DNA of 64,000 bases from the IMG/VR virus record IMGVR_UViG_3300050122_000263, positions 496,001 to 560,000 of that record; one strand, 5' to 3'. The notes beneath the pieces are model-generated. The model did not search any database. It was not told the DNA's origin and worked only from the letters and a program-made list of their open reading frames with translations. The position numbers were made by a program, and so were the translations under genes. Shown piece by piece: positions 1-60,618 of the stretch (position 1 is its first letter; each line of letters begins with the position of its first letter).

Positions 1-1140
1 GGCCCCACTGGCCCTTGCTGTGCGGGCCCAACCGGTCCAACTGGACCGGCAGGACTTATTGGATTGGCTGGCCCCACCGGCCCCACTGGTGACGTCCCCT
101 GTACCGATTCATTGGTGAAATATGAATTCTTCATTGCTGGTGAGAATCGCCCCGTTACTGGTCCTATCTCCTTCACTATCGGTGGAGTCGATATGCCTGC
201 TCAAGGTTGGGATAAGATCACAGGCCTGGTTGACAGTGCTTTATACACCAAGGATCAAGGTATCCTAGGTGAGCAAGGACTTGGATTTGCTGCACAAGCT
301 GCTCACGAGATCGATAATGCTCATTATATTCAGATCGATCTGGCTAACTTGATTGCCAACACTAAGCCCGGAACCACTCCCACCATTACTATTCAGAGTA
401 ATCAGACGAATGAAGGCTTTGAACTACTTGGCTCGGCCACATCGGGGGTGGGAGTGGGTGGATCCAATCTCACCTCGCTGGGTACCCACTCTGGCACCCT
501 TGTGATCACTGTACCTATTCCTAATTGGAGCGGCCCCGGCTCCTTTAATGACGGCACTTACCGTTATCTCTCAGTCATCGCTACTGGCACAGCGGCCCCT
601 CCTGCTCCTGATGTACTGCTGAATTCCATCCTCTTCACAGAGTGTGCTCAGCCGGTGACTAGTACCGATTTCCTCTGGACTTACAAGACTACCACTCAGA
701 ATGCCATCGCTGGACCAGCATTCGATAATATTCTTTTCGATCCTGCGGCTGGTGATCCAGAACTTGAGGGCTGGACTCACTCTATCACTGGGCCCTCTTC
801 CGGTCTTTTCGTCTGCCCAACATCAGGCAAATACAAAGTTGACTTCTCCGTTTCTGTTGCCAGTGATGGAGTAGCCGGTAGGATAGCCAGTGTGCGTGTA
901 GCTATTGATCGCGGATTTGGCCTGACTGAGATAATGGGTAGTGCTATCACAGAGAATCTCTCACCCACCGCTGCCACTCGTCTTGTGCTTGTCAACCCTA
1001 TTATCACTTTCTTACAAGCTGGTGATACACTTGCCCTGCAGTTTGCCGCCAGTTCCACCACAGTATCGATCGCACCCTCTGGACCATTGGCCGGTGAAAC
1101 TGCCACTGACGCATCTATCGTCATCATTCGTCTGCAATAA
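1..1140 (+). CDS. Collagen-like (Gly-X-Y) fibre protein with C-terminal beta-rich domains (BclA-C/C1q-like); 5' truncated by window
   Basis: Frame 1 is open from base 1: GPTGPCCAGPTGPTGPAGLIGLAGPTGPTG, followed by two beta-rich globular segments, the last resembling BclA-C/C1q-like heads. Confidence 0.8.
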   Translation, partial: GPTGPCCAGPTGPTGPAGLIGLAGPTGPTGDVPCTDSLVKYEFFIAGENRPVTGPISFTIGGVDMPAQGWDKITGLVDSALYTKDQGILGEQGLGFAAQAAHEIDNAHYIQIDLANLIANTKPGTTPTITIQSNQTNEGFELLGSATSGVGVGGSNLTSLGTHSGTLVITVPIPNWSGPGSFNDGTYRYLSVIATGTAAPPAPDVLLNSILFTECAQPVTSTDFLWTYKTTTQNAIAGPAFDNILFDPAAGDPELEGWTHSITGPSSGLFVCPTSGKYKVDFSVSVASDGVAGRIASVRVAIDRGFGLTEIMGSAITENLSPTAATRLVLVNPIITFLQAGDTLALQFAASSTTVSIAPSGPLAGETATDASIVIIRLQ

Positions 1141-2971: not shown

Positions 2972-4291
2972 TCATTCAGAGCCATGTGCCTGACATGGTA
3001 GAATGGCCTGGAACTTGCAGAACATGTCAGAGGTTATCTCGAACACCGGCATAGGCATGCTCAGCTGTGACAGGCTATCATCATCGCAGTGATCGGACAA
3101 GATGTAGCGCGCTCGTAGCCCAAAGATTAAGGGCACTAGATAGGGTAGCCGTGGAACATAGTGGAGAGCGCTGACATGGAGATCCGACATAGATGAATTC
3201 TGCTTCAACATTAAACGGATGGGGCGCCAACCCAGCAGATCATAACAGATGGCCAGGGATTTGTTGCTTCTGTTATGTGAAACAGCTGGTAACACTGGAA
3301 TTGGCGGCGCATAAGGTGAGATGAACTGATCCGCCAACTCTGGATGAAAAGGGCCTGGCTCCCAGCTGATTTGAATCTCATTCATAACATGTGCAATCTG
3401 CTGGCACTGAGTCACATCATGGCCAGCTAAGGAGCGTGCCAAATAACAGACATGGTCGATAATCTGCTTGGACTCAGGACTGGTATCATCAGCTAGAGTG
3501 TCGACACGCGACAGAAAAGCGTGGAATAATTGCAGATTTTTCTCCGGCTGGTGAGGCTCATGAGGCAGGCCCTCAATTATCTCAGGTGTAGGTTCAAGGA
3601 TAGCCTGCAGTAACTTCTTCCTATTGCTGACAATGTGGTTGAGTCGACCGGCACGTACTGGTTCAGTAATGTATTGAGACTGGCCTTGTAACTGAGTCAG
3701 AGTGTAGAGGGTGCTGTAGCTGGGGTAATGGATCTTACGGAACAGATCCAACAGAGCTAGGGTTAGATCGTGCTTGTTCAGGACTGTGGAGGGTTCAATC
3801 TGAATTCTATGGATTGAGGTCAAGAAGCATCCGTTTTGTGAGAAGGGTTGAGCCAGCTTAAGTAGTGACTCCAGCCCTGTTGGTGGGAAGGTCATGAAAA
3901 CCATGAGATAGAGTGAGAGATGATGGGCGTGGGTCTGAGCCTTCAGGCCTTGGGAGAGAGCCTCTCGTTGGATGGTGTACCAGATCAACTCAGTCAAATA
4001 ACAGATGAGTTGGTAGACTGAGCTACGCAGTGCAAACTCAGTGTGATAGCGCCTATAGAGCTGGTAATGGGTTGTTACTTCAGAAGTCTCTGTATCTGTT
4101 AGGGCTGGTATCTTAATGGCTCTAACCCCATTGACTCTGTCACCAAAGTCGTGATACAATCTGATCTGCCAGAGCAGGGGAGCCTTCCAAACTTGATGGA
4201 ACTGCTTGCAAGTCTGGATCAAGCTGTTACAGTCCTTGAGTTTGAGGGGATGAAGGATGTGACAAAGCACATGAGGCGGAAGCGATTGCAT
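2972..4291 (-). CDS. F-box domain protein
   Basis: N-terminal LPPHVLCHILHPLKLKDCNSLIQTCKQFHQVWKAPLLW matches the F-box consensus. Confidence 0.85.
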   Translation of the reverse strand: MQSLPPHVLCHILHPLKLKDCNSLIQTCKQFHQVWKAPLLWQIRLYHDFGDRVNGVRAIKIPALTDTETSEVTTHYQLYRRYHTEFALRSSVYQLICYLTELIWYTIQREALSQGLKAQTHAHHLSLYLMVFMTFPPTGLESLLKLAQPFSQNGCFLTSIHRIQIEPSTVLNKHDLTLALLDLFRKIHYPSYSTLYTLTQLQGQSQYITEPVRAGRLNHIVSNRKKLLQAILEPTPEIIEGLPHEPHQPEKNLQLFHAFLSRVDTLADDTSPESKQIIDHVCYLARSLAGHDVTQCQQIAHVMNEIQISWEPGPFHPELADQFISPYAPPIPVLPAVSHNRSNKSLAICYDLLGWRPIRLMLKQNSSMSDLHVSALHYVPRLPYLVPLIFGLRARYILSDHCDDDSLSQLSMPMPVFEITSDMFCKFQAILPCQAHGSE

Positions 4292-11008: not shown

Positions 11009-11914
11009 TTAGTTGCGGCCATAGCTGTAGCCCGATCTTAGGCCGGAGTTGAAACCTGGGTTAAGACTCAGACTGCTGAGAGGCTCATTGAAGCTGGTGA
11101 GATTAGGAGTTCTGCGGATGGGTGTATTAGCTTCACTGCCGGAAATGCCGGTTCTAATTTCAGCTCCAATTCCGGTCCCAGCTCCAGGCCCAACCCCGCT
11201 AATAAAGCGATGCAGTGAGGCAATAGTTTCCTGGTTCTTAGCGATCTTATGGTACAACAGCTCCTCAAACACGATCTTCTGCTGATCTAGGATAAGAGCG
11301 ATGGCGCTAGATCGCCAGATATCGGCCCAAGCTTGTGTCTGATTGGGGCCAGTGCCTGTATCGTGCTGTAGCTTGGCAACAAACTTATCATTGAAACCAT
11401 ACCAGAGGGCCCAGCGCATCAAATCATTGGGTGACAGATATTCTGTCATTCCCTTAGTCAGGATGCCAGCCATCAGAAGGCCAACTTCGTAATGACCGAA
11501 GTTAACTTCATACAAGCTAACCTCAGCCTTGATGATGCGCCAGATGTAAGTGGATAAGTAATTCTTGTCCTGATTGCTAGCTTCAAACTCCTTACGCTCG
11601 GTTGGATGTGTGGAGGTGTAATTGGATACAATTGAGCGTAGAGTTTGATCCGAGAAAGCTTCAGGCTTCTGGGCCTTACCCACGCGCAGCTGCAAGATGT
11701 TACGACGCATTGTCTCAGCTTGTAGGCTAAGATATGAGTATTCTGGATCGGACTGCACTAATGCTGCTGTTGTGTCCATACGCCCGGCCATCCAGGGTGT
11801 CACCAGCTGCCAGTTCTGGAACAGCCAACTTTGCTCAACACTTCTCACTTCTACAACTGTCTCTTGCATAGGCGCGACTGTGGTTTGCTCTGCTTTATTA
11901 GACTCGTTACCCAT
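11009..11914 (-). CDS. Hypothetical protein (starts MGNESNK, possible myristoylation)
   Basis: First ATG at 11914; about 300 aa; Ser/Gly-rich tail. Confidence 0.7.
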   Translation of the reverse strand: MGNESNKAEQTTVAPMQETVVEVRSVEQSWLFQNWQLVTPWMAGRMDTTAALVQSDPEYSYLSLQAETMRRNILQLRVGKAQKPEAFSDQTLRSIVSNYTSTHPTERKEFEASNQDKNYLSTYIWRIIKAEVSLYEVNFGHYEVGLLMAGILTKGMTEYLSPNDLMRWALWYGFNDKFVAKLQHDTGTGPNQTQAWADIWRSSAIALILDQQKIVFEELLYHKIAKNQETIASLHRFISGVGPGAGTGIGAEIRTGISGSEANTPIRRTPNLTSFNEPLSSLSLNPGFNSGLRSGYSYGRN

Positions 11915-12058
11915 TTTAGTTTGCAATTTTTATTTTACAGCGTATTATTCATTCTAACCAGATTCAGCTCAGGTTAAGGTGGAGTTGTGATGCAAACAGT
12001 TACACAACTCCACCATCAATAGGTATGTCCAAGTTTAAGACAGCGCTTCTAAGTGGGT

Positions 12059-12084
12059 AAAACAGCAGATATGCTGTTTTTAAC
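12059..12084 (-). terminator. 3' hairpin
   Basis: AAAACAGCA-gata-TGCTGTTTT followed by TAAC, just downstream of the 12097 stop. Confidence 0.6.
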
Positions 12085-12096
12085 AATCATCCATGA

Positions 12097-12561
12097 TTAT
12101 TTACGGCGTTTCAGGCGCAGATGATAGCCACCAATAACGGTCTTGCCTGGCTGCCAGTCCCGTTCTGGGCTATGGAAACGAGTCAGGATGTCTTTCAGCT
12201 CAAACTCTGCAGTTTGCTCATCTCTGACATAGTAGATTTGGTTGTTGACGAAACCAGCCGCCTCCAACAGTATGGCCTTCAGTTCTGGCAGATCTGCGAT
12301 TGTCTTTAGTTCTCCAATTCTGTATCTATCGACCTCATGATAGAGGTGTCCTAGCTTGCTGCACATCTCATCAAGGCTGGGCGGTACAACTCCATATTCC
12401 TGCCGCCCCTTAACGATAGCTGACAGTAAACGATAGAAAAACTTGAGCACTGAGTAACCATTGAGTCGGTCACAGCCAGAGCCGATGTGGCAAACCCGTT
12501 TCTCCAAGTGTCTCCATCCATCATTAACTCTTATGTAAATGTAGTAGTCGCGTGAGCTCAT
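12097..12561 (-). CDS. Hypothetical protein
   Basis: 154 aa ATG ORF. Confidence 0.7.
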   Translation of the reverse strand: MSSRDYYIYIRVNDGWRHLEKRVCHIGSGCDRLNGYSVLKFFYRLLSAIVKGRQEYGVVPPSLDEMCSKLGHLYHEVDRYRIGELKTIADLPELKAILLEAAGFVNNQIYYVRDEQTAEFELKDILTRFHSPERDWQPGKTVIGGYHLRLKRRK

Positions 12562-12598: not shown

Positions 12599-13501
12599 TT
12601 AAGCTGGATGCCTAGCCACATCAGTTTTAACACCCGTGTTGAAGTAAGCCAGCCGCTTAGCTCTGGCTATCTCAGCTTGAGACTGAGGCCTTGCGGGCTG
12701 AGTTGCAGCTCTAATATGGTTGATTGCATATGTCTGAGTTACAGGAGCTGTTGCTATTTCATCGATATCCACCAGTTGCAGCGGTACAAAAACTCGGTTG
12801 AGAGGCTGTACTGTCATAGTGAAGATTTCCTCTCCATTCACCAGAGTTGGGCCAGTCACAGCAGGTTGTGAGGGAGCAGATCCCACCTGCTGAGTCTCCC
12901 CCAGACCAACCATCTTCAACCATTCATGCCGTTTAGTACTGCGGAAGGAGGCTAAACAGATAGATCCGTCCTTTGGACCTCGCTGCATCTTGGAGGAGAG
13001 TCGAGCACAGTTTGTCATAACCAGATGCTTGAGCCAAGGGCCAGTCCTAGCACAGAGCGCGTAGAAGGTGGAGAGGGTGGCCCAGGTTAATGATTTGGTC
13101 ACCTTGCGGCTCTTATTGTCTTGTCTATATTTGCATTGAATGGCTGTGAACTGTATGCTGTTGCTAAACCCGGAACTGGCTATCAGATCAATGCCAATAT
13201 CAGCCGTACCCAGGCGCAGATAGGCACGCAGCTCGGCAGGCACATCACGCAGCATCCAGACCTCCTGATAGCGGCCGGTTGCCAATAACCAATCTCGACA
13301 GAACTGCTCCCAAACTCGCCCCTTAGCAGTCTTATCATCGCGCTGCTTCATCTCTGCAATACTCTGCACGGGGCGGTGGAAATAGTCTTCCAGCTGCTGA
13401 AGCAACAAGTCAAAGACCGTGACTGTAGCTGGCAGAGTCTTGGATAACAACATGTGTATAATCTTTTCTGTCTCAAACAGAGGGGTAGTAGAGCCCTGCA
13501 T
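12599..13501 (-). CDS. Mrr-like / type IV restriction endonuclease-fold (PD-(D/E)xK) protein
   Basis: GRVWEQFC...YQEVW...ADIGIDLIA...AIQCKYR is the D-x-G-I-D...Q-C-K motif of Mrr_cat-type nucleases. First ATG at 13501. Confidence 0.75.
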   Translation of the reverse strand: MQGSTTPLFETEKIIHMLLSKTLPATVTVFDLLLQQLEDYFHRPVQSIAEMKQRDDKTAKGRVWEQFCRDWLLATGRYQEVWMLRDVPAELRAYLRLGTADIGIDLIASSGFSNSIQFTAIQCKYRQDNKSRKVTKSLTWATLSTFYALCARTGPWLKHLVMTNCARLSSKMQRGPKDGSICLASFRSTKRHEWLKMVGLGETQQVGSAPSQPAVTGPTLVNGEEIFTMTVQPLNRVFVPLQLVDIDEIATAPVTQTYAINHIRAATQPARPQSQAEIARAKRLAYFNTGVKTDVARHPA

Positions 13502-14005
13502 GTACACGAGGTTATTCAAGGTGTTTGTTGAGGCGCTATTTGCAATAGGCAGTGGCAAACGAGGCTAGTCACTTATATATTCAAGCTGTTTTTTCTTGCC
13601 TCTTATTCAGGGTGAAAATTAGAGTAAGAGAAGAGATCTGATCCCACCTGGTTATAGAAACCTGCTTGAAAGAAGGCCGTGTCAAAAGAAATAGCAACCA
13701 GCGCCGATGAATCAGCAATATCTTCTCGTCTGTGTAGGCGGCGAAATTAGATTGATGCGACCAATTGTGGGAGATATGTTTGCCCCTCGTTATGCCCAGA
13801 AAGGGACAATTGGAGCTATTCTACCTCTTCCTGAAGCGGAAGGGACTCAGACTAGCAGATCAGATGATTCAAGACATCATAGCAAATCAGCCACAATTCA
13901 TTAGGGAACTTAACCTAAAGTTTAAAAAATACAGCAACACTGCTGTATTTAGCCAAAATAGAAAATGTTTGTACAACTGCTGAGCTCAACATGTGAAAGT
14001 TGTAA

Positions 14006-29219: not shown

Positions 29220-29946
29220 AAAATTCTATAGGAGTAATATTTTCGTTAAAAACATCACAGGAGTGATGTTTTGTTTCCCTGAGTTGCGGCGTTGGGTGGA
29301 GTCGATAACGCGGCAGCTCCGCTCCAGAGCTCTCACAGTGATATTCAGAGTATTATCATTATTATAACTTGATGTTTGAATTCTTACAATTACAACAGTC
29401 TGTATAGATATTAGGTTAGCAGTGCTAGAACATGTATAACTTGATATATCCTAAGATATCACACTGGTAACAGCTAGGTTATGGAGCTACTGTTGTAGAC
29501 CGCAGATTCAATAAGACACATTAAACTCAGTTATCTTCTAGAGCATAATGGGAATATATAAGTAATGATATCTCTAATTCCTCATATCAACATTGATAAG
29601 CTAATACATATACAACAGTCTGTATATGTAAGAATTCATTGACTTGGCCTTAATAATAGAGCTACCTTGAATATTATCGCAGGGCATCACTGAGCGAGCT
29701 CAGTGATTGATGCTGGAGTTGTTGGGTTCTAGACCATCTCTCCAGCTGTTCAGCGTTATATCTGCCACAATCTTCTGAGCAGATGGTTAAAGCTTAGGAA
29801 ATGCTAATTCGCAGTATATGAGACTTATTGAAGAAACCTGTTATGTACAGATTTTTTTGAACGATTCAGAGCTAAGAGCCCTGGTTATTAGGGTGTGTTT
29901 GAGAGTTATAGTTGGTCACTGTGACATGTCAGCTGAGCCAGACCGA

Positions 29947-50572: not shown

Positions 50573-50598
50573 AAAAAACACCAAATGTGGTGTTTTTA
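50573..50598. terminator. Bidirectional 3' hairpin
   Basis: AAAAACACCA-aatg-TGGTGTTTTT between convergent genes. Confidence 0.65.
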
Positions 50599-51068: not shown

Positions 51069-52046
51069 TTAGCGTGAGTTGAAGGTGAAAGAAACATCTT
51101 GTTTGTTATTGATGTACTTGAAGCGGCCACCCACCCAAATAGGAGTTCCTTCCACTTTGATCTGCATGGCCTTTAGGAAGTCTAGGATTGAGCGAATGAA
51201 GTTGAAGGTATAGATGTTGCCAGGACACTGTACTCCTGTCGGACCAAATGCCTTGTTGTTAGCGTTGTTAACTAGATCTCGATTACGATGCATAAAGACC
51301 AGCTGGCCATCAGATCCTCCTGTGTGGAAGATGGAGAATTGGGCCACCGCGATCAGGAAGTCGTTCTCCTCCAGACCAGCCATATCGCCCTTCCTATTGA
51401 GGATGGCTTTGGTAAAGTTATCCAACAAAGCCAGTTGTGGCACAAAGACCAGGAAACGCAGGTGACCTGGCAGGGAGCGAATAATACTCGACAGCCTGAA
51501 GACATTGCCAATATTACGGAAGAACACAGAAATACCAGTGATGAAGTCACCACGTAACACCGTCACTATACCACGCAGCACGACCAGGAGTTGGATCATT
51601 TCCTTCTCTACCTCATTGTCAACGATACCAAAGGCTCGATTCGTCTCGATCAGGATGGATTTGGATAGGAAATCCTCAAACTCCTCAATAGTGAGCTTCT
51701 TCTCATTGATATCGTGGAAGTAGTGACGCATATCAATACCTTTAGCTTTCTCTCCCTGCACGCGAAGTAGATCTTTCCTGACTTTATCTGGTAGTACGAT
51801 GCCCATACCAGAGAAGAGCTTGAACATCTCAATGAAGAAGCCAGAGGTGTAGATGTAGGTCTCATCCCGATCTGTCACCCAGTCGCGATCATCCTTGTAG
51901 CCTATGCCGAAGAAGGCAGCAGCCTTAGGGTGCTTATACAGATAGTCGAAGCCAAAACTCAGAATATAGAAGCGAAAGGGCTTGTAGAAGGCATACAGAG
52001 TAAGAAAAGCCACCACACTTGCTAGAAACCAGGTTAGCAGGGACAT
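51069..52046 (-). CDS. Short, divergent cytochrome P450-like protein
   Basis: N-terminal TM anchor; C-terminal AFGPTGVQCPGNIYT resembles the FxxGxxxCxG heme-thiolate motif at the expected position; no ExxR motif; only 325 aa. Confidence 0.6.
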   Translation of the reverse strand: MSLLTWFLASVVAFLTLYAFYKPFRFYILSFGFDYLYKHPKAAAFFGIGYKDDRDWVTDRDETYIYTSGFFIEMFKLFSGMGIVLPDKVRKDLLRVQGEKAKGIDMRHYFHDINEKKLTIEEFEDFLSKSILIETNRAFGIVDNEVEKEMIQLLVVLRGIVTVLRGDFITGISVFFRNIGNVFRLSSIIRSLPGHLRFLVFVPQLALLDNFTKAILNRKGDMAGLEENDFLIAVAQFSIFHTGGSDGQLVFMHRNRDLVNNANNKAFGPTGVQCPGNIYTFNFIRSILDFLKAMQIKVEGTPIWVGGRFKYINNKQDVSFTFNSR

Positions 52047-52179
52047 CTTAAATGTGTGGGAGATACTTTATCTCGTGAGCGACCCAACGAGTCAGATCAC
52101 TTTCCCAGTGAAAATATTCACAACAAGAGTCTATTAACCCTGAACAGGGATAATCGGTTTTTACAATTTCTCTCCCTCT

Positions 52180-53223
52180 TTACACATGAACTTGCCCAGT
52201 CTCTAACGAGATCATATCAACTGCGGAGTTCGATTCAGTCAAGGTCTCATATGGTTCCTTACGCTCTCCCTTGATCCAAAGCGCCACACTCAGCAAACTA
52301 GCCACCAACGCGGGGATCATAATGTAGAGCGGATAATCAAGCCCTGGGTTAAGGTCTGGGAAGACAGAGTAGAAGATAGCAGTGGAGGGATTGACGATCG
52401 AGGTTGAGATCATGTTATAGTTGGTACTGATGGCATTGAGATAGACAGCTGCCACGAATAAACAGATGTAGGAAGCAGTGAATATCTCAAGCAGCAATGT
52501 AGGTACCAGTTTATGTACAAAGATGTCGCCACTGTCCCTGAAGGCTATTATAATATTGTCGGAGTAGCCGAAGAAGATATCAAGCCAGGAGAAGGCTACC
52601 ACTACCACGAACTGTACCAGACGGATGTAGAAGACTAGGCGTATCATGTTAAGGAAGCTGCCATCTCGGGTGTCAGTGATGTATTTCTCCTGCATCACAT
52701 TATGCCCGCTGCGGAAGGTGGTACCTATGGTGAAGATAGCAATCCAAAGGATGGAGGATGGGCTCCAATGAGAATAGATGGGAATAATTGAGATACCTAC
52801 GGAGGTGAACAGAAAAATTAGGCTCGGCACTATATACCACTTCTCATAGAAGACATTCTTCTTCAAAATATATTTAGTCATAATGATACTGGGGATGACA
52901 GCCAAGCCAGGTAGGATAGATTGCACCACAGCAGGGGTACGGATCGGATTAGCCGCATATAATGTGAAGATGCCGGCAAATGCATTACAGAGCCCTGCTA
53001 TCAATATAGTCTTCTTCTCTGGGACTCGCAACAGCTTCCAATCCTTGCGAGCCAAGAACAAGAGAATAAGGCCGAAGACAATACAGAAATGCGCCCCAGA
53101 GACTAGGATAACGAAGATCATGGATGGAAACATCTGCGCCAGAAATGTTACAATAATGCGCTGTGTAGCCCCAGTGATGCTGACGGCGAAAACCAGAAAT
53201 GCAATTCTGCGAGTTGCATCCAT
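52180..53223 (-). CDS. CRT-like (chloroquine-resistance-transporter family, DMT superfamily) transporter 1
   Basis: About 10 TM; AGLCNAF...YAANPIRTPAVVQSIL...IPSIIMTKYILKK...VMQEKY. Confidence 0.8.
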   Translation of the reverse strand: MDATRRIAFLVFAVSITGATQRIIVTFLAQMFPSMIFVILVSGAHFCIVFGLILLFLARKDWKLLRVPEKKTILIAGLCNAFAGIFTLYAANPIRTPAVVQSILPGLAVIPSIIMTKYILKKNVFYEKWYIVPSLIFLFTSVGISIIPIYSHWSPSSILWIAIFTIGTTFRSGHNVMQEKYITDTRDGSFLNMIRLVFYIRLVQFVVVVAFSWLDIFFGYSDNIIIAFRDSGDIFVHKLVPTLLLEIFTASYICLFVAAVYLNAISTNYNMISTSIVNPSTAIFYSVFPDLNPGLDYPLYIMIPALVASLLSVALWIKGERKEPYETLTESNSAVDMISLETGQVHV

Positions 53224-53294
53224 ATTTACGCGGTACTAATATACAAGATTGTTTAAAAGTGAAGCTGGCTCAAATTTTCTTGTCACTTTTAAAG

Positions 53295-54119
53295 ATGCAC
53301 ACAGATTACATTGCTGACGCAGTAGTCAAGAGCCGCGTCTATCCGGTGTCACTCAGCATTCTCTTTATCGGCCAGTTTCTGATCTTTGCTGGTGCACTTT
53401 GGGTCGCTGATGTTTTGCTAACCACTGTTTTCCACGGTCTGGATGGCTATAATGGACGCATGTATTCTTATCTGCTGATTCATATTCCCTTCATCTTTGT
53501 CGTGAGTGGTGTGAGGCAATGGGCTTGGTACTTGCTGACCTTTGTTCACGGTATCGCCCACGTAACCCACCCTGCCCTTTTTGGTGTAGTCTTCAACACC
53601 AATTATACACCTCTGTATGACTACATCGTGCATGCAGCACAATGTCTTTGTGTGTGGTACTGGAACCAGGACCATTTCCCCATCGGCGTGATGACCAGCC
53701 AACTCATGCTAACCGGTGCTGCTATCGCCCATGTGCACCAACCCTTTTTGCAGACATTCCTCTGGATTGTTATCTCTGGCTTTGGCGTTTATGGTACCCA
53801 ATACCATATGCAGCTTCTCAATGTCAAGAAACATCATCATATCTTCGTCTGTGGTTGGATCATCTGGCTGTCACCCTACCTCGGCTATCTTGTGCCAGGT
53901 CGCCTGCCTGAGTGGGACGCTGTCACCAACTACATCGGCCTATTTCGTGTTTGGTTTGTTGCCTTTTACCTGACCATGATCTCGGTTGGACAACATGATC
54001 CACTTGATGAAGCCAGAGAGGATCAGAGTATGCAGATTCAGCAGGGCAAGCGTGTAATCAGTTTCATCCAAACAGACACAGCCCCTGTTGAGGGTGACAG
54101 CAAGATCAAGGCAAATTAA
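53295..54119 (+). CDS. His-rich polytopic membrane protein of unknown family
   Basis: AAAGATG start at 53295; about 7 TM; HGIAHVTH, DYIVHAAQ, AHVH, QYH, HHH. Confidence 0.75.
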   Translation: MHTDYIADAVVKSRVYPVSLSILFIGQFLIFAGALWVADVLLTTVFHGLDGYNGRMYSYLLIHIPFIFVVSGVRQWAWYLLTFVHGIAHVTHPALFGVVFNTNYTPLYDYIVHAAQCLCVWYWNQDHFPIGVMTSQLMLTGAAIAHVHQPFLQTFLWIVISGFGVYGTQYHMQLLNVKKHHHIFVCGWIIWLSPYLGYLVPGRLPEWDAVTNYIGLFRVWFVAFYLTMISVGQHDPLDEAREDQSMQIQQGKRVISFIQTDTAPVEGDSKIKAN

Positions 54120-54124
54120 CCCCG

Positions 54125-54210
54125 GGCTCAACTGGAGTTGAGCCACACCTAGTGTTCTGATATGTATATATGTAAGCCGTGTAAATATTTCGCTACTTCA
54201 AGCGAAATAT
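54125..54210. terminator. Two hairpins between His-rich gene and CRT-like 2
   Basis: GGCTCAACT-gg-AGTTGAGCC (54125-44) and ATATTTCGCT-acttca-AGCGAAATAT (54185-210). Confidence 0.5.
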
Positions 54211-54275
54211 CCCCTATAATAGTGCAGAGAGTGGAAATGTTAAATCACTCTGCTTGTTTCTGAGCAAAAATTGTA

Positions 54276-55391
54276 ATGACTGCTGAAGTTGATGTGAAGT
54301 CCGGCCAGTTTGTGGCCTTGGCTATTGCCGTCATTACCCTCAATATGTTTCAGAGCATTGTTATCCCATTAGCAGCTCAATACTATACATGTCTCTACTT
54401 TATTTGTTTGATCACAGCTGTTGAGTTCTGTATAGTTATGTTTGTTGTTTTTATTTCGGTTAGACGTTACAATACTGGTAGCTGGACATTAGGGCCGATG
54501 CGAGCCAGGAAGACAGTTATCCTCTCCGGTATTTTTAATGCCTTAATGTCTATTATACTAGTGTATTGCTCAAATCCAGCGCGTACTCCTGTTATCATCC
54601 AATCTATCTTCACAGGCTTGGTTATTCTGCCCAGTGTTCTTTTCACCCGCATTGTGCTTAAGAAACAGGTCGTCTATGACAAACGCTTTATTATACCTAG
54701 CCTACTACTTTTAGCTGCCTCAATCGCCATCCCAATCGCGGGCATGGGAGCTGAAGGAACCTGGGCATCCTCCAATATCTACTGGAGCTCAGCCTATCTG
54801 TTTGGAGTAGTCTGCCGCAGTTACTTCAGCATCCTTCAGGAGAAGTATTTTGTTGAGACACAGGATGGCAGCATTGAGAATAAGCTCTCCTTAACTTTCT
54901 ATACTAGATTGGTGCAGCTTGTTGTTGTACTGGCTTGTTGCTGGCTAGAGTGGGTGGTTGGCTACACCGATCATCCCATCACCGCTTTCGGCGAGAGTTT
55001 TATGGCCATGTGGACTCAAGCGATAGGAGCTGCTCTGCTACAAGGCTTCATTGCTGCCTATCTCATTAACTATGTGTTGTCTATCTACCTCAATGCCATC
55101 AGCACCAACTACAGCATGATTATCTCAACGGCAGTGACGCCTGCTCTTGCTCTTTTCTTCGTTATCATACCAAGCCTCAATAATGGGCCTAAATGCAGCG
55201 TCGCTTTTGTTCTTCCAGCTCTGGCATGCTCCATTACTAGTGCTGTACTCTGGATTCTGGGTGAGAAGAAGACAGGCTACCAGATCATTGATAACAAAGG
55301 CATCAGTCCACCGGCCTCATTTGAAGGGACAATCGATCATATGAGTAAGATCTCAATTAACACAACATCTATTAGGAATGAGTCTGCCTGA
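54276..55391 (+). CDS. CRT-like transporter 2
   Basis: SGIFNAL...YCSNPARTPVIIQSIF...LPSVLFTRIVLKK...ILQEKY...YLNAISTNY; paralog of 52180-53223. Confidence 0.8.
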   Translation: MTAEVDVKSGQFVALAIAVITLNMFQSIVIPLAAQYYTCLYFICLITAVEFCIVMFVVFISVRRYNTGSWTLGPMRARKTVILSGIFNALMSIILVYCSNPARTPVIIQSIFTGLVILPSVLFTRIVLKKQVVYDKRFIIPSLLLLAASIAIPIAGMGAEGTWASSNIYWSSAYLFGVVCRSYFSILQEKYFVETQDGSIENKLSLTFYTRLVQLVVVLACCWLEWVVGYTDHPITAFGESFMAMWTQAIGAALLQGFIAAYLINYVLSIYLNAISTNYSMIISTAVTPALALFFVIIPSLNNGPKCSVAFVLPALACSITSAVLWILGEKKTGYQIIDNKGISPPASFEGTIDHMSKISINTTSIRNESA

Positions 55392-55462
55392 TGTTCAATT
55401 TAAAAACATCATCTGTGGTGTTTTTTCTCCTTATATACAACGATTCTCATCTCTGCATATGG

Positions 55463-56971
55463 TTAATAGAGATAAGGGATGAGACGGTAGGGAACTGTCT
55501 CACAGTATTTGTGCCAAGAGAGGCCATACTTCTTGGCACAACGGGCTTCATCACGGTAACAACGGATGACTAGCAAGATGATCATGTAGATACAGTAGAA
55601 ATAAGGGATGATGCTGTCTGAGCCACAGGCTAAGCAATAGGCTGTTGACAGGATAATATCCCCTGTGTAGTTCATGTGACGGGCTACGCCCCATAGACCC
55701 TCAACCAGGAGTTTGCTCTCGTGGCAGCCAGACTCAGTTGTGTAGCTACACAGTACATGCTGCTGTCTGGCCTGTTCCTGCGGAGTTGAACGTCTGAAAC
55801 AGTCCTTCTGGCTATTGGCGACTCGGAAGATGACGTAACCCAGCAGTCCCAACAGTAGGATGGAAAAGAACTTAGAGTTACCGAGCGTGACTGGATGGTA
55901 GCTGAGATACTGAGCCTGTATAGTATAGGTGAAGGGCAACCAGACACAGTCTCCCCAAGCTAGCACCCAACCAAAGTGGTCATGGGCGATATCAATAGTG
56001 CGCAGATACCAATTCTCATTGAAGAAAAAGTCAAGCACATAGATAGCCTGTAATATATTAACCAGAACCATGGAGTCTGAGACATAACCGTAGCGCTTAG
56101 CTTGGGCTGCTGCAAAGGAGATGTTGATGAGAGTCCAGGCGATAATACCTGGTCGCCCGTTGAAAAAGAGCTTGAAATCCAAGTTGCCAATACGCGGGTT
56201 AAACTCGACGCCCATAATGAAATCATACACAAAGCTGCCTGAGTATTTATTATCACGTGGATGAGTTGGGGCATAATGGGCTTTTAGGTAAGACATAATG
56301 GACAACAAAAGACCGGTGATATTAGCTACAAGGAAGAGAGCCATCCAATTGTCCGCGATCCAAGTCACAGACAAGATACTGTAATAGCAGAGCATGACGA
56401 AGGTGATGTGAGTGATGAGCCAAGCCTGCAGCCCGTTAATATTGTAATAGAGCAGATGACCGGCAGGAGTTAACTGCCCCTGTTTGTGACCACCAACATA
56501 GCTAGGCGTCAGCTTATGTAAGCCATCAGGCAGCACAGCCAATAGAGTTTGCCAGGCAAACCAGCCAATTAGGGTGATTGTGACTGAGCCTATAGTATCT
56601 CTGATGTGAACGATGTCCAGGTAGCTGAGATTGTCTGAATTGGAGAGTTGGCTGTTCTCTGTAACAGCTACGAGGTGATCACCTCGCGACGATCCTGGGC
56701 TCAGGCCCAGGATCGGTACGAAATTCAACAGATTCTCGGCGAATGGCAGGAGATGATCATTTACACAGAGCATGATAAGACACAGGGCCAAGCCAGGCAC
56801 CCAAATGAACATAAGTAATACACCGCGTACAGTCAGCTTGCTTGGGCTATCGCAGCGGCCCCACGTCTTCTTCCCTATAGCATTAGTATTGCCTGTGGCT
56901 GGGGTAATATTGATATTCGAGCGAGAAGTGAAGTCTCCAGCACAGTCGCTATATGGAACATTAATGGACAT
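55463..56971 (-). CDS. DHCR7: 7-dehydrocholesterol (sterol delta-7) reductase, ERG4/ERG24 family
   Basis: GVEFNPR...DFKLFFNGRPGIIAWTLIN...DFFFNENWYLRTIDIAHDHFGWVLAWGDCVWLP...WGVARHMNYTGD...RDEARCAKKYG...VPYRLIP. The RTIDIxHDHFGW signature is DHCR7-type. First ATG at 56971. Confidence 0.95.
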   Translation of the reverse strand: MSINVPYSDCAGDFTSRSNINITPATGNTNAIGKKTWGRCDSPSKLTVRGVLLMFIWVPGLALCLIMLCVNDHLLPFAENLLNFVPILGLSPGSSRGDHLVAVTENSQLSNSDNLSYLDIVHIRDTIGSVTITLIGWFAWQTLLAVLPDGLHKLTPSYVGGHKQGQLTPAGHLLYYNINGLQAWLITHITFVMLCYYSILSVTWIADNWMALFLVANITGLLLSIMSYLKAHYAPTHPRDNKYSGSFVYDFIMGVEFNPRIGNLDFKLFFNGRPGIIAWTLINISFAAAQAKRYGYVSDSMVLVNILQAIYVLDFFFNENWYLRTIDIAHDHFGWVLAWGDCVWLPFTYTIQAQYLSYHPVTLGNSKFFSILLLGLLGYVIFRVANSQKDCFRRSTPQEQARQQHVLCSYTTESGCHESKLLVEGLWGVARHMNYTGDIILSTAYCLACGSDSIIPYFYCIYMIILLVIRCYRDEARCAKKYGLSWHKYCETVPYRLIPYLY

Positions 56972-57124
56972 TGCAGCTGTTTGCAACTTTCTTACGATCT
57001 CTCCACTACAATTGGCTGATCAGTTCTCGCTTCTTTCGCTGTTGTCATAGAATTAGCACTATGATTATGACTGATATAAAGTTATATCAGTCAGATTAAA
57101 GTCGTACTAGAAACAACCTAGATA

Positions 57125-57481
57125 ATGCAACTTGTATTGGATGCTGAGTCATGGCTTTGTCTCTTTGGTATTATGCTGCTACTGAGTAGATTGTCTTTCT
57201 CATCTGTTTTATATAGTTACCTCTTTGCTAGTGCTTGTCTAAGACGATATCGACAATATTCGCGTACTGGTAAAAGCTTGTGTAGTCAACTGCTAGAGTT
57301 CTCCGCCATGACAATTATCTTCTTCAACCTCATCTTCATCAGTCTAGCTAGCCAAGACTATACAATTCATGATGTATTCCAACGTAGTTATCAATACTTC
57401 AGCAGTATTGTGCCAGCTCCTGTTGTGATAGCGGTATATGTAGTGATCGTCTACATCAGCTATCTCTGGGCGGCCCATTGA
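57125..57481 (+). CDS. Small three-TM membrane protein
   Basis: 118 aa, mostly hydrophobic, divergent from DHCR7. Confidence 0.6.
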   Translation: MQLVLDAESWLCLFGIMLLLSRLSFSSVLYSYLFASACLRRYRQYSRTGKSLCSQLLEFSAMTIIFFNLIFISLASQDYTIHDVFQRSYQYFSSIVPAPVVIAVYVVIVYISYLWAAH

Positions 57482-57904: not shown

Positions 57905-57932
57905 TTAAAAACTTATTACAATAAGTTTTTTA
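57905..57932. terminator. Bidirectional 3' hairpin
   Basis: TT-AAAAACTTATT-ac-AATAAGTTTTT-TA. Confidence 0.7.
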
Positions 57933-57955: not shown

Positions 57956-59395
57956 TTAATTGTAAGTGTATTTCTCGAGCTTCCAACCGCTAACCAACAG
58001 CTCTGAGCTCTGCAACATGATGTTAGGAAGTGCTATTTTCGGCTCTTCCCGGGGCAGAAATGAGCCATAGATATGAACTGGATTGTTGCGAAGATACGGC
58101 TCATTTTCCTCTTGAGGTAATAGCTGTAAAGTTCCATAATCCCCATCATCGATTCTATATATTTTAGGATCTGGACACCATGATGATGTTACTTGTAATA
58201 TATCACTAGGTCTCTCGATAACTCTTACCCTATTATCCCAACATCGCAGATGGTGGGAGAGAGCCGTACAACCACCAATATTAGGAGGCATCAATTGAGG
58301 TAGAGTACCAACCATAACATATAACGGGCGCTCATGATACTCAGGCTTTTCAGGGAGTGGAAGATTGAGATATGTCACCTGAGCCTCCTCTTCTGCCTTA
58401 CGGACCGACAGGTTACGTATGACTAGCTCTGGTTGATCATCAAGCCAACCAAAGATTATGTTCATATCGAGTTGCACTCTATTGCTCTCCCAGGCGAGAC
58501 GCTGTTCATCATACATGATGCGGACTGGCAACTGACACCATCCATTCCAAAAATTTTGACTTATCTGTTGGCATGTCTTACAAAGACGCCTGAAGCGAGC
58601 AAGCTCGTGTATAGAAAGGTAGCCGAGGATCTCAGCGATGATAGGTTTGAGCAACAACATCCAGAGCTCATTTCGAGCATTCAGTTGATTGCGTAGATAA
58701 TATCTTGCAGTCCATCCCTCAGGCGTAGCTTGGGTATCATTACATGTGAAATTGGGAAGTTGTAGCAATTCTTCAACACATGGGGTAAGATCAGCATGTA
58801 TAACTCGCATGGCAAAACTAGGTACATTGCAAGACCTCCCGGTAAAAAGGGTCTTAATTGGAATAGTTGCATCGATATCCCCTTCTGTATACATTTTCAC
58901 TATCTGAACAGGCTCTGTCTTGGTTATCATCTTTACCACTCTTATTTGATTAACGGTGATAGAGTCGCGAGTTACACGACATTGATGATATGTTTGTATA
59001 AAATCATCAGTTATCACGGTTTCATAGCGCTGTAACCCCGCACGATAGAATTGAGGAAGGGTACCCTCAATGACCGACAGATTATGCGCTTTATCATTGA
59101 AGATGTCCATATTCCAGTAGCGCTTGATAAGCTCCATTTTGTTCGGGCTCCAACCATAGACAAGCAGAGTAGTGTCATAATACAACCAGTTAAAACTGGG
59201 AATTGTGAGCCAATAATAAATGCGGACGGGAAGAATCTGCCATTGCTGCCATAAGGTCTGAGCCTGTTGGCAGAACCATTTACATGTTTTTCTTAGATTA
59301 GCTAGATGGTATGGCCCAAGTTGTGACAGCAGATGTTGAACAGTCTTCTCCTCAAAGTTGGCCCATAACAGAGGAATGATTATCCCTGCGTCCAT
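57956..59395 (-). CDS. Tandemly duplicated F-box-like protein
   Basis: LLSQLGPYHLANLRKTCKWF...WQILPVRIYY and ILGYLSIHELARFRRLCKTC...WCQLPVRIMY. First ATG at 59395. Confidence 0.7.
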   Translation of the reverse strand: MDAGIIIPLLWANFEEKTVQHLLSQLGPYHLANLRKTCKWFCQQAQTLWQQWQILPVRIYYWLTIPSFNWLYYDTTLLVYGWSPNKMELIKRYWNMDIFNDKAHNLSVIEGTLPQFYRAGLQRYETVITDDFIQTYHQCRVTRDSITVNQIRVVKMITKTEPVQIVKMYTEGDIDATIPIKTLFTGRSCNVPSFAMRVIHADLTPCVEELLQLPNFTCNDTQATPEGWTARYYLRNQLNARNELWMLLLKPIIAEILGYLSIHELARFRRLCKTCQQISQNFWNGWCQLPVRIMYDEQRLAWESNRVQLDMNIIFGWLDDQPELVIRNLSVRKAEEEAQVTYLNLPLPEKPEYHERPLYVMVGTLPQLMPPNIGGCTALSHHLRCWDNRVRVIERPSDILQVTSSWCPDPKIYRIDDGDYGTLQLLPQEENEPYLRNNPVHIYGSFLPREEPKIALPNIMLQSSELLVSGWKLEKYTYN

Positions 59396-59555
59396 CACAA
59401 CTTTCACAACACTTCGTTCACAACATGTTAATCATTGTCCTCTACTCAACACATTTATCTACCTACAAATAGAGTCAAACTTAAACAGGAGACTTAATCA
59501 ATCGATACTTCATAACATTACCTATTGCGAAGATACGCCATATATGGTGCATTTT

Positions 59556-60590: not shown

Positions 60591-60618
60591 AAAACATCTC
60601 ATATGAGATGTTTTTTAA
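60591..60618 (-). terminator. 3' palindrome
   Basis: Perfect 24-bp palindrome AAAACATCTCATATGAGATGTTTT followed by TTAA. Confidence 0.75.

What the first reader, a model, noticed from the sequence alone, without database searches (positions are those of the whole stretch)
51069..57481. Candidate viral sterol/membrane-remodelling locus: P450-like, CRT-like, His-rich membrane protein, CRT-like, DHCR7
Seen: six contiguous membrane-protein genes. P450-like (-) and CRT1 (-) are divergent, across 71 bp, from the His-rich gene (+) and CRT2 (+), which converge on DHCR7 (-); a three-TM ORF follows. Nowhere else in the window are polytopic proteins clustered like this. Known: DHCR7 reduces delta-5,7 sterols; Acanthamoeba sterols are mainly delta-5,7; DHCR7 homologs exist in Mimivirus (R807) and some amoeba-associated bacteria. 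I know of no description of DHCR7 clustered with twin CRT-like transporters and a His-rich enzyme. Inference: a multi-step pathway that oxidises, reduces and moves sterols or related lipids to alter host or virion membranes.
Basis: partly seen in the sequence, partly recalled or inferred. Interest (0 to 1): 0.85.

Follow-up and report, generated by a model that had tools for sequence, protein, structure and literature searches.

The report
Conserved giant-virus DHCR7 / mini-P450 membrane cassette
A giant virus from peat carries a tight block of membrane-protein genes: a sterol reductase, a very small P450-like protein, a histidine-rich membrane partner and two transporters. The same genes sit together, and two of them are sometimes fused, in several distantly related giant viruses, so they very likely work as one lipid-modifying unit whose chemistry is still unknown.

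Summary
Genes A(-) B(-) | C(+) D(+) E(-) lie exactly as described, and the assembly is sound.

- **E** is a clear DHCR7 orthologue. It is 56-60% identical to Mimivirus R807 and to animal DHCR7, and it nests in a clade of giant-virus sequences.
- **A** has no Pfam or PDB sequence match, but a confident model hits only cytochromes P450. It is a 325-aa "mini-P450" with an invariant FGP-x4-CPG cysteine loop.
- **B and D** are paralogues with the 10-TM DMT-superfamily fold. The "CRT-like" label rests only on weak, indirect hits.
- **C** belongs to a family with no Pfam, PDB-sequence or PDB-fold relative. It has a conserved HxxxH…YDxxxH…H signature.

The new result is that these genes are linked in other viruses. 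One has E-C-D-A in tandem, several have C|D-E, others have C-A, and one protein is a natural C-A fusion. Mimivirus R807 (DHCR7), L808 (P450) and R809 (a probable distant C relative) look like the same module.

The functional link is strong. The sterol substrate, heme binding and the transporters' cargo are inferred. The host is unknown, because the source is a peat metagenome. ORF F is not conserved.

The parts
51069..52046 (-). Gene A: 325-aa 'mini-P450', with an N-terminal TM anchor and a reduced P450-fold domain. Invariant FGP-x4-C274-PG loop.
   Evidence: No Pfam or PDB sequence hit. AF2 model: pLDDT 86.7, pTM 0.82. The Foldseek PDB top 50 are all P450s, E 2.7e-4 to 7e-3. In the ESM Atlas, 98 of 100 feature hits are p450. 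The family has 20 homologues of 260-362 aa.
52180..53223 (-). Gene B: DMT-superfamily transporter, a lineage-specific paralogue of D.
   Evidence: 39% identical to D, E 2e-78. Orthologue next to A in L014, 57% identical. 9 TM-like segments.
53224..53294 (.). 71-bp divergent intergenic region between B and C, holding an exact 11-nt inverted repeat TCACTTTTAAA (53252-53262 / 53283-53293).
   Evidence: These are the only two exact copies in the window. Function untested.
53295..54119 (+). Gene C: 274-aa His-rich polytopic membrane protein from a family of unknown fold class. Conserved H85-x3-H89, P93, N101, Y104, P106, D109-x3-H113, C117, S161, G164, G167, H171, D208.
   Evidence: Alignments A1 and A2. 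45 representative clusters in 1.84e9 proteins. AF2 pLDDT 87.1, pTM 0.81. No significant PDB fold match. No Pfam match in any of 35 members.
54276..55391 (+). Gene D: DMT-superfamily 10-TM transporter. This is the copy found in every cassette that contains a transporter.
   Evidence: Atlas structure TM 0.63-0.71 (by query) to nucleotide-sugar, EamA and TPT transporters. No Pfam hit. Homologues lie next to DHCR7 in L007, L013, L022, L027 and L014.
55402..55425 (.). Palindrome AAAAACATCA-n4-TGGTGTTTTT between the convergent genes D and E. It is a likely shared 3'-end hairpin of the genome-wide type.
   Evidence: 5 in the window against 0.04 expected.
55463..56971 (-). Gene E: 7-dehydrocholesterol reductase orthologue (ERG4/ERG24 family). 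Its N-terminal part (about 130 aa) is longer than in the cassette relatives and does not align with them.
   Evidence: PF01222 E 2.4e-100. MaSR1 (4quv) E 4.5e-72, including the C-terminal LWGxARHxNYxGD region. 56-60% identical to Mimivirus, Cotonvirus, Waddlia and vertebrate DHCR7. Lies in the giant-virus clade of the tree.
57125..57481 (+). ORF F: 118 aa with 3 TM-like segments. Not shown to belong to the cassette.
   Evidence: No homologue in any related locus. No family hit.

Best explanation
This is a conserved giant-virus gene cassette built from four membrane-protein families that act together on one lipid in an ER-type membrane. That lipid is most likely a delta-5,7 sterol of the host.

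**Shown**
- E is an intact DHCR7 orthologue.
- A has a reduced P450 fold with an invariant cysteine loop and an N-terminal membrane anchor.
- C is a polytopic His-cluster protein that is genetically coupled to A, by adjacency and by a natural single-chain fusion, and to D and E by adjacency.
- D, and its duplicate B, have the DMT transporter fold.

**Inferred**
- E saturates the C7=C8 bond using NADPH.
- A and C form one two-subunit membrane oxidoreductase. A is the heme-thiolate catalytic domain. C holds a metal or heme on its His/Asp cluster, which hydropathy and the fusion topology place on the same membrane face as the A domain. C would then either relay electrons or substrate to A, or carry out a second step on the same lipid.
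- The DMT proteins exchange a water-soluble co-substrate or product rather than the sterol itself.
- The net effect would be to convert oxidation-prone host delta-5,7 sterols into a virus-chosen sterol for factory or virion membranes.
For: **Linkage**
- The window has A B | C D E.
- L014 has the same arrangement at about 60% protein identity, with 3.5 kb inserted before E.
- L027, L028 and L029 have E-C-D-A co-directional and contiguous.
- L007, L009, L013 and L022 have C | D E.
- L017, L018 and L026 have C-A.
- P0044 is a 605-aa C-A fusion; its A part is 38% identical to the window's A, E 1e-71.

**Identity of each gene**
- DHCR7.
- P450 fold. The invariant FGP-x4-CPG loop aligns with the real Cys pocket of Mimivirus L808.
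- Conserved His/Asp signature in C.

**Mimivirus parallel**
- R807 (DHCR7) is adjacent to L808 (P450).
- R809 is adjacent to L808. It is rank 2 in the BFVD fold search with the C model. It aligns HxxxH..P..YDxxxH with the C profile at a score above 100 of 100 shuffles and above all natural hydrophobic decoys.

**Lipid genes beside A or C in other viruses**
- An Abhydrolase_3 gene lies one gene upstream of C in L017, and a CDP-alcohol phosphatidyltransferase/cytidylyltransferase gene lies next to A in L016.
Against: - A-C occurs without DHCR7 within 10 kb in L017 and L030. A occurs alone in L015, L016 and L033. The sterol link therefore may not hold for the A-C pair.
- A lacks several P450 hallmarks. 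It gets no Pfam p450 score, the Arg two residues before the Cys is missing, there is no ExxR at the K-helix position, and the globular part is only about 280 aa. Heme binding is unproven.
- C has no recognisable fold relative, so metal or heme binding is inferred only from conserved His and Asp residues. Model coordinates could not be inspected.
- None of the DMT relatives found here handles sterols.
- No RNA run was listed, so expression is untested.
- The host and its sterols are unknown.
Confidence: 0.5

Rival explanations
1. The A-C pair is an autonomous oxidative module for some other hydrophobic substrate, such as a fatty acyl or isoprenoid lipid, a lipid peroxide or a xenobiotic. DHCR7 and the transporters sit beside it only because membrane-lipid genes tend to travel together in these genomes.
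For: A-C, or A alone, is found without DHCR7 within reach in L015, L016, L017, L030 and L033. The neighbours there are phospholipid or esterase genes. P450s that lack classical motifs often catalyse isomerase- or peroxide-type chemistry; this last point is general knowledge and was not tested here.
Against: C is directly adjacent to DHCR7, or separated from it only by D, in five diverged lineages (window, L007/L022, L013 and L027; in L014 a 3.5-kb insertion intervenes). Gene order and strands differ between them, which argues for selection on the linkage. Mimivirus again places a P450 next to DHCR7.
Confidence: 0.25
2. C is not an enzyme. It is a metal or heme handling membrane protein, acting as a transporter, chaperone or insertase that matures or supplies the heme protein A. 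The DMT paralogues import the needed small molecule.
For: The C-A fusion and adjacency fit a maturation partner as well as they fit a catalytic one. The conserved His cluster lies in transmembrane helices. C has no similarity to a known enzyme fold.
Against: C-D-E cassettes without A within 10 kb (L007, L022) would then lack the client protein. Conserved Asp, Asn, Tyr and Cys residues around the His residues look more like an active site. No transporter-like internal repeat was seen.
Confidence: 0.15
3. The cluster is a chance neighbourhood of membrane-protein genes, or a piece of cellular (host) DNA mis-assembled into the contig.
For: Most of the window consists of ORFans, so context gives little guidance.
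Against: The synteny and the fusion argue against chance. Contigs from two separate runs span the block identically. GC content and the intergenic palindromes match the genome. E lies in the giant-virus DHCR7 clade, separated from animal and bacterial sequences by a branch with SH-aLRT support of 100.
Confidence: 0.02

Closest known systems
Mimivirus R807 (DHCR7) - L808 (P450, called CYP5253A1 from memory) - R809 locus
   Same: DHCR7 lies directly next to a P450-type gene and a His-rich membrane ORF. R807 is 49% identical to E over 477 aligned residues (57% over the conserved part) and sits in the same viral clade. R809 shares the HxxxH..P..YDxxxH signature and a weak fold match with C.
   Different: L808 is a full-size, Pfam-positive P450 (E 2.3e-36) fused to a 2OG-Fe(II) oxygenase-like domain. 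It is not a 325-aa mini-P450. No DMT transporter is present in that locus. The homology between R809 and C is only probable (hhalign E 0.012).
Cytochrome P450 superfamily (PF00067)
   Same: The overall fold by structure search. An N-terminal membrane anchor like that of microsomal P450s. An invariant Cys in an F-G-x-x-G-x-x-C-P-G loop just before a helix, about 50 residues from the C-terminus. A conserved E-(T/S)-N in a central helix that could be the I-helix acid-alcohol pair.
   Different: No sequence-level match. It is about 100-150 residues shorter than the smallest known P450s. It lacks the Arg of FxxGxRxCxG and a clear K-helix ExxR. TM-scores are only 0.3-0.47.
DHCR7 / ERG4-ERG24 sterol reductases (human DHCR7; MaSR1, PDB 4quv)
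   Same: Full-length homology, a conserved C-terminal cofactor-binding region, and 56-58% identity to vertebrate DHCR7.
   Different: Its N-terminal part (about 130 aa) is longer than in the cassette relatives and unaligned with them. It is viral and sits in a cassette. Its activity and sterol substrate are untested.
Drug/metabolite transporter (DMT) superfamily: SLC35 nucleotide-sugar transporters, EamA, CRT-like (PF08627)
   Same: A 10-TM fold with TM-score about 0.7 to nucleotide-sugar, TPT and EamA models. Language-model neighbours include CRT-like and SLC35F clusters.
   Different: B and D match no Pfam DMT family. Only a distant relative, P0005, gives a sub-threshold CRT-like hit (20.2 bits against a cut-off of 26.9). 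The substrate is unknown.
Membrane desaturase/hydroxylase-cytochrome b5 fusions (general knowledge)
   Same: The architecture is analogous: a His-rich polytopic membrane domain joined to, or partnered with, a heme domain, as in the P0044 C-A fusion.
   Different: C lacks the HxxxH / HxxHH / HxxHH boxes and gives no FA_hydroxylase or desaturase hit. The heme-type domain here has a P450 fold, not a b5 fold.

Membership tests
DHCR7 (ERG4/ERG24, PF01222) | Pfam ERG4_ERG24 score above the gathering cut-off | tested here: met
   336.8 bits against a cut-off of 27, E 2.4e-100.
DHCR7 (ERG4/ERG24, PF01222) | Belongs to the DHCR7 group rather than the delta-14 or delta-24(28) reductases | tested here: met
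   Among named best hits, all but two (generic ERG4/ERG24; 'phospholipid methyltransferase') are annotated 7-dehydrocholesterol reductase, at 54-60% identity over 95-100% of the searched region. Solved delta-14 reductases score lower. No explicit tree with ERG24 or ERG4 outgroups was built.
DHCR7 (ERG4/ERG24, PF01222) | Conserved C-terminal cofactor-binding region | tested here: met
   LLVEGLWGVARHMNYTGD and the C-terminal RD(E/D)xxCxxKYG region align with MaSR1.
DHCR7 (ERG4/ERG24, PF01222) | NADPH-dependent reduction of the sterol C7=C8 bond | not testable with these tools
   Needs an enzyme assay or sterol profiling.
Cytochrome P450 | Sequence-profile match (PF00067) | tested here: not met
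   No hit at E<=10 for any of 19 family members. No PDB sequence hit from the family profile.
Cytochrome P450 | P450 fold | tested here: met
   The Foldseek PDB top 50 are all P450s, probability about 1, E down to 2.7e-4. Atlas structure TM 0.60 by query. The domain is strongly reduced.
Cytochrome P450 | Cys-ligand signature FxxGxRxCxG | tested here: inconclusive
   F267-G-P-x-G-x-x-C274-P-G is invariant and aligns with the L808 Cys pocket. The Arg at position -2 is absent.
Cytochrome P450 | K-helix ExxR and the I-helix acid-alcohol pair | tested here: inconclusive
   An invariant E134-(T/S)-N136 lies in helix 120-139 and is a possible I-helix pair. No conserved ExxR lies between it and the Cys loop.
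Cytochrome P450 | Heme-thiolate spectrum (450 nm with CO) | not testable with these tools
   Needs purified protein.
CRT-like transporters (PF08627) | Pfam CRT-like match | tested here: not met
   No hit for B, D or their close homologues. Only the distant relative P0005 reaches 20.2 bits, below the cut-off of 26.9.
DMT superfamily | 10-TM DMT fold | tested here: met
   Atlas model pTM 0.74, with TM 0.63-0.71 (by query) to SLC35, TPT and EamA models. 9-10 hydropathy segments.
CREST superfamily (alkaline ceramidase / PAQR / TMEM8; considered for C) | 7-TM fold with SxxxH, D and HxxxH motifs in that order, or a sequence or fold match | tested here: not met
   Only weak language-model neighbours, scores 0.72-0.75. 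No Pfam hit in 35 members. No PAQR or ceramidase among the PDB fold hits. A viral hemolysin-III model ranks only 16th, E 0.65. The motif order also differs.
Fatty-acid hydroxylase / desaturase di-iron enzymes (considered for C) | HxxxH, HxxHH, HxxHH boxes and a Pfam match | tested here: not met
   Only one HxxxH box plus single His residues are conserved. No Pfam match.

The most novel reading that the evidence does not exclude
A and C together are a previously unrecognised kind of two-component membrane oxidoreductase, single-chain in some viruses. A minimal heme-thiolate P450 fold of about 280 aa is coupled to an 8-TM His-cluster metalloprotein. This pair was recruited repeatedly next to DHCR7, from Mimivirus (L808/R809) to uncultured peat viruses, to make a virus-specific sterol from host delta-5,7 sterols.
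Probability: 0.3. Interest if true: 0.85.

Novelty: new variant of a known kind. Interest (0 to 1): 0.72.

Why it matters
DHCR7 and P450 genes have been known in giant viruses for years, but no function has been assigned to them. This analysis shows that they belong to a larger recurring cassette. Two of its families have no Pfam or solved-structure sequence relatives: a drastically reduced P450 fold, and a His-cluster membrane protein that is sometimes fused to it.

That supplies concrete gene sets for reconstitution experiments. If the tentative R809 link holds, it also supplies an entry point in a cultivable virus, the Mimivirus R807-L808-R809 locus. Together these would make it possible to test directly why giant viruses re-tailor host sterols. 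If A binds heme, it would also be one of the smallest P450-type proteins.

Tried and rejected
- **Pfam and NCBIfam on A, B, C, D and F.** Nothing was found. Scanning every family member individually gave no consistent weak hits.
- **PDB sequence searches with single proteins and with family profiles for A, C and D.** Nothing real turned up; a rhodopsin hit for the D profile is a short hydrophobic match.
- **CREST, ceramidase or PAQR identity for C.** Rejected.
- **Is the C-terminal domain of Mimivirus L808 a C homologue?** No. It is 2OG-Fe(II)-oxygenase-like.
- **P0096 as the DHCR7 of the L017 virus.** Rejected. It lies on a Legionella-like bacterial contig.
- **Scans for more loci.** IMG/VR, JGI-metagenome and prokaryote-genome scans returned mostly the same virus, two short contigs, one GVMAG contig carrying only A, and no prokaryotic relative of C.
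- **Expression.** No RNA run was listed.
- **A shared promoter motif upstream of the genes.** The candidate motifs are not enriched.
- **Geometry of the His cluster.** It could not be checked because model coordinates are not exposed.

Full report
**1. The observation**

ORF listing confirms the six ORFs, their strands and their spacing:
- A 51069-52046(-).
- B 52180-53223(-).
- C(+). Its long ORF starts at 53199. Homologues and the Logan-contig gene call support the ATG at 53295 (JGI calls the 306-aa ORF).
- D 54276-55391(+).
- E 55463-56971(-), convergent with D across 71 bp.
- F 57125-57481(+).

A hydropathy scan gives 9-10 TM-like segments in B and D, at least 5 in E, 3 in F, and a single N-terminal anchor in A. 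It scores only 2 segments in C, which helix-by-helix reading puts at about 8. No comparable run of polytopic proteins occurs elsewhere in the window.

The window comes from a 619-kb contig of a JGI metagenome, which IMG/VR lists as viral. Public runs that hold it are peat metagenomes. Eighteen of the 20 large ORFs I scanned have no Pfam family, so this is an ORFan-rich giant virus whose lineage and host I could not establish.

The block is native to that genome. Its GC content matches the window. It contains one of five AAAACA..TGTTTT intergenic palindromes, where 0.04 are expected. Contigs assembled separately from two runs span 51069-57000 without a single difference, though these runs may be the source samples.

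**2. What each gene is**

*E (DHCR7).*
- It is an ERG4/ERG24 protein: PF01222 E 2.4e-100.
- It aligns along its length with the solved sterol reductase MaSR1, including the C-terminal cofactor region.
- It is 56-60% identical to Mimivirus R807, Cotonvirus, Fadolivirus, Waddlia and vertebrate DHCR7.
- In a 46-sequence tree, all giant-virus sequences form one side of a branch with SH-aLRT support of 100. This includes the window, every cassette locus and the mimivirid isolates. Animals and Chlamydiae/Legionella-like bacteria lie on the other side. The tree has no protist or plant sequences, so the donor is not addressed.

*A (mini-P450).*
- It has no Pfam, NCBIfam or PDB sequence match, even with a 19-member family profile.
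- The ESM Atlas places it among P450s; 98 of 100 feature hits are p450.
- A confident AF2 model (pLDDT 86.7, pTM 0.82) retrieves only cytochromes P450 as its top 50 PDB matches. E-values run from 2.7e-4 to 7e-3, probability is about 1, and TM-scores are a modest 0.3-0.47.
- The family has 20 members of 260-362 aa. It has an invariant N-x2-F-G-P-x4-C-P-G loop immediately before a helix, about 50 residues from the C-terminus. It also has an invariant E-(T/S)-N in a central helix.
- The only segment that hhalign aligns with the genuine P450 Mimivirus L808 is that protein's Cys pocket. This alignment is not significant on its own.
- A is therefore a strongly reduced P450-fold protein. Heme binding is plausible but unproven.

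*B and D (transporters).*
- They are paralogues: 39% identical, E 2e-78.
- They have a DMT-superfamily 10-TM fold, with TM-score about 0.7 to SLC35, TPT and EamA models.
- They fail every Pfam DMT model, including CRT-like. The only support for "CRT-like" is a set of language-model neighbours and a sub-threshold CRT-like hit in a distant relative, P0005.

*C (His-rich membrane protein).*
- An exhaustive profile search of 1.84 billion representatives finds 45 clusters, nearly all 190-290 aa.
- None of 35 members matches any Pfam family. The profile matches no PDB sequence.
- A confident model (pLDDT 87.1, pTM 0.81) has no significant PDB fold match. The best hit has E 0.24.
- Conserved positions are H85-x3-H89, P93, N101, Y104, P106, D109-x3-H113, C117, S161, G164, G167, H171 and D208. 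That pattern looks like a metal or cofactor site inside a helical bundle.

*F.* It has no homologue in any related locus and no family hit. I do not count it as part of the unit.

**3. The decisive evidence: linkage in other viruses**

- Homologues of D at 46-47% identity lie in AT-rich giant-virus-like contigs (L007/L009, L013, L022). There they sit directly next to a DHCR7 gene (61-63% identical to E) and divergently next to a C homologue (40-43% identical). The arrangement is C | D E.
- The closest relative, L014, carries all five genes in the window's arrangement at 57-65% identity. It has 3.5 kb of other genes inserted between D and E. Its C and D are split across reading frames, either as pseudogenes or through assembly indels.
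- A third lineage, L027-L029, is seen on 17 contigs. It has E, C, D and A as a contiguous co-directional cassette, with D 28% and A 39% identical to the window's genes.
- Other viruses keep only C-A: L017/L018 and L026 have them adjacent, and L030 has them 6 kb apart.
- P0044 is a single 605-aa protein. A C domain (residues 5-214) is followed by a hydrophobic anchor and a complete A domain (E 1e-71).
- A also occurs alone within the fetched flanks in L015, L016 and L033.

Four families recur side by side in different orders and orientations across proteins only 28-65% identical, and two of them are fused in one case. This is strong evidence of a shared function, with C as the hub.

B is a duplicate specific to the window/L014 lineage. 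The cassettes outside that lineage carry a single transporter that is closer to D.

**4. Link to a cultured virus**

In Mimivirus, R807 (DHCR7) converges on L808. L808 is a 709-aa protein with a bona fide P450 domain (E 2.3e-36) and a 2OG-Fe(II)-oxygenase-like C-terminal part.

The next gene, R809, is an ORFan. Three observations connect it to C:
- It is the second-best hit of the C model in the viral structure library (probability 0.93, E 0.18).
- hhalign of the C profile against R809 aligns HxxxH, P and YDxxxH residue for residue (E 0.012).
- The hhalign score of 22.9 exceeds all 100 composition-preserving shuffles (mean 14.0, sd 2.6, maximum 21.0) and every natural hydrophobic decoy (maximum 19.8).

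Each line is weak. Together with the gene's position, they make R809 a probable distant member of the C family. I put this at about 0.6.

**5. How it most likely works**

Shown:
- The genes are functionally coupled.
- E is DHCR7.
- A has a P450 fold.
- C carries a conserved His/Asp cluster.
- B and D have the DMT fold.

Inferred:
- E reduces the delta-7 bond of delta-5,7 sterols.
- A and C act as one membrane oxidoreductase.
- Hydropathy suggests about 8 TM helices in C. In the P0044 fusion, the short SSKYR loop between the last helix of C and the anchor of A then places H85, H89, D109, H113 and the conserved PxWD loop on the same membrane face as the P450-like domain. That fits electron or substrate hand-over, or two consecutive steps on one lipid.
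- The DMT proteins more plausibly carry a soluble co-substrate than a sterol.
- One biological rationale is to replace highly oxidisable delta-5,7 sterols in factory or virion membranes. This is my inference from general sterol chemistry, and nothing here tests it.

**6. Rivals**

- A-C may serve a non-sterol lipid, since it also occurs away from DHCR7.
- C may be a metal or heme handling partner rather than an enzyme.
- Chance clustering or host contamination is excluded for practical purposes.

**7. Comparison with what is known, and novelty**

Viral DHCR7 and viral P450s are known (PMC9270025, PMC12443978, PMC3423634). Full-text searches found no description of this cassette, of the mini-P450 family, of the C family or of the C-A fusion. 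The key P450-in-viruses paper was not available to read.

I rate the finding a new variant of a known kind: virus-encoded sterol and lipid tailoring, with two component families that are new at the family level.

**8. Limits**

- There are no expression data.
- The host is unknown.
- Genome-wide co-occurrence could not be computed, because only flanks of up to 10 kb were available.

Noticed in passing
window 50574-50597, 55402-55425, 12059-12080, 29249-29272, 60591-60614 (also 57907-57930): A recurring intergenic palindrome of the form AAAACA-n-TGTTTT. There are 5 in the window against 0.04 expected. Two copies are nearly identical (AAAAACAYCA/TGGTGTTTTT), and the three checked (50574, 55402, 57907) sit between convergent genes. 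They are probably bidirectional 3'-end hairpins of this virus.
   Followed up: partly
window 53252-53262 and 53283-53293: An exact 11-nt inverted repeat TCACTTTTAAA lies inside the 71-bp divergent B|C intergenic region. These are the only two exact copies in the 64-kb window. It may be a shared bidirectional promoter or operator element.
   Followed up: partly
L021 (Mimivirus AY653733) 11725-12411: The Mimivirus ORFan R809, next to P450 L808 and DHCR7 R807, shares the HxxxH..P..YDxxxH signature and a weak fold match with the His-rich family C.
   Followed up: partly
window 55463-56971 (N-terminal ~130 codons of E): The window's DHCR7 has an N-terminal part, about 130 aa, that is longer than in the cassette relatives and does not align with them. 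It contains one hydrophobic segment. Mimivirus R807 does align from residue 36.
   Followed up: no
L014 5841-7663: In the closest relative, the C and D homologues are split over two or three reading frames. They are either decaying copies or indel errors in that assembly.
   Followed up: no
L019 8423-11266: A Legionella-like bacterial contig (KdpD, Legionella_OMP) carries a DHCR7 homologue that is 60% identical to E. It lies directly after a reverse-transcriptase (RVT_1) gene, which hints at mobile-element-associated transfer.
   Followed up: no
L017 7858-10957; L016 8447-10990: Other lipid genes lie near A and C homologues. An Abhydrolase_3 esterase/lipase is one gene upstream of C-A in L017. 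A fused cytidylyltransferase / CDP-alcohol phosphatidyltransferase is divergent from A in L016.
   Followed up: no
window 2972-4291 and 57956-59407: F-box or F-box-like proteins. The first is clear (E 5e-7). The second is only faintly annotated in the JGI gene call.
   Followed up: no
window 64-1140 and 12599-13558: One ORF has a BclA C-terminal-like domain (below the Pfam cut-off). Another is an Mrr_cat_2 restriction-endonuclease-like ORF. These are among the very few recognisable domains in an otherwise ORFan-rich window (18 of 20 large ORFs have no Pfam hit).
   Followed up: no
L007/L022/L013 upstream of C: In the C|D-E type cassettes, a Glyco_transf_92 gene lies two or more genes upstream of C. 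LicD and chitin synthase genes are nearby in L007 and L022. The DMT transporter there could equally serve glycosylation.
   Followed up: no
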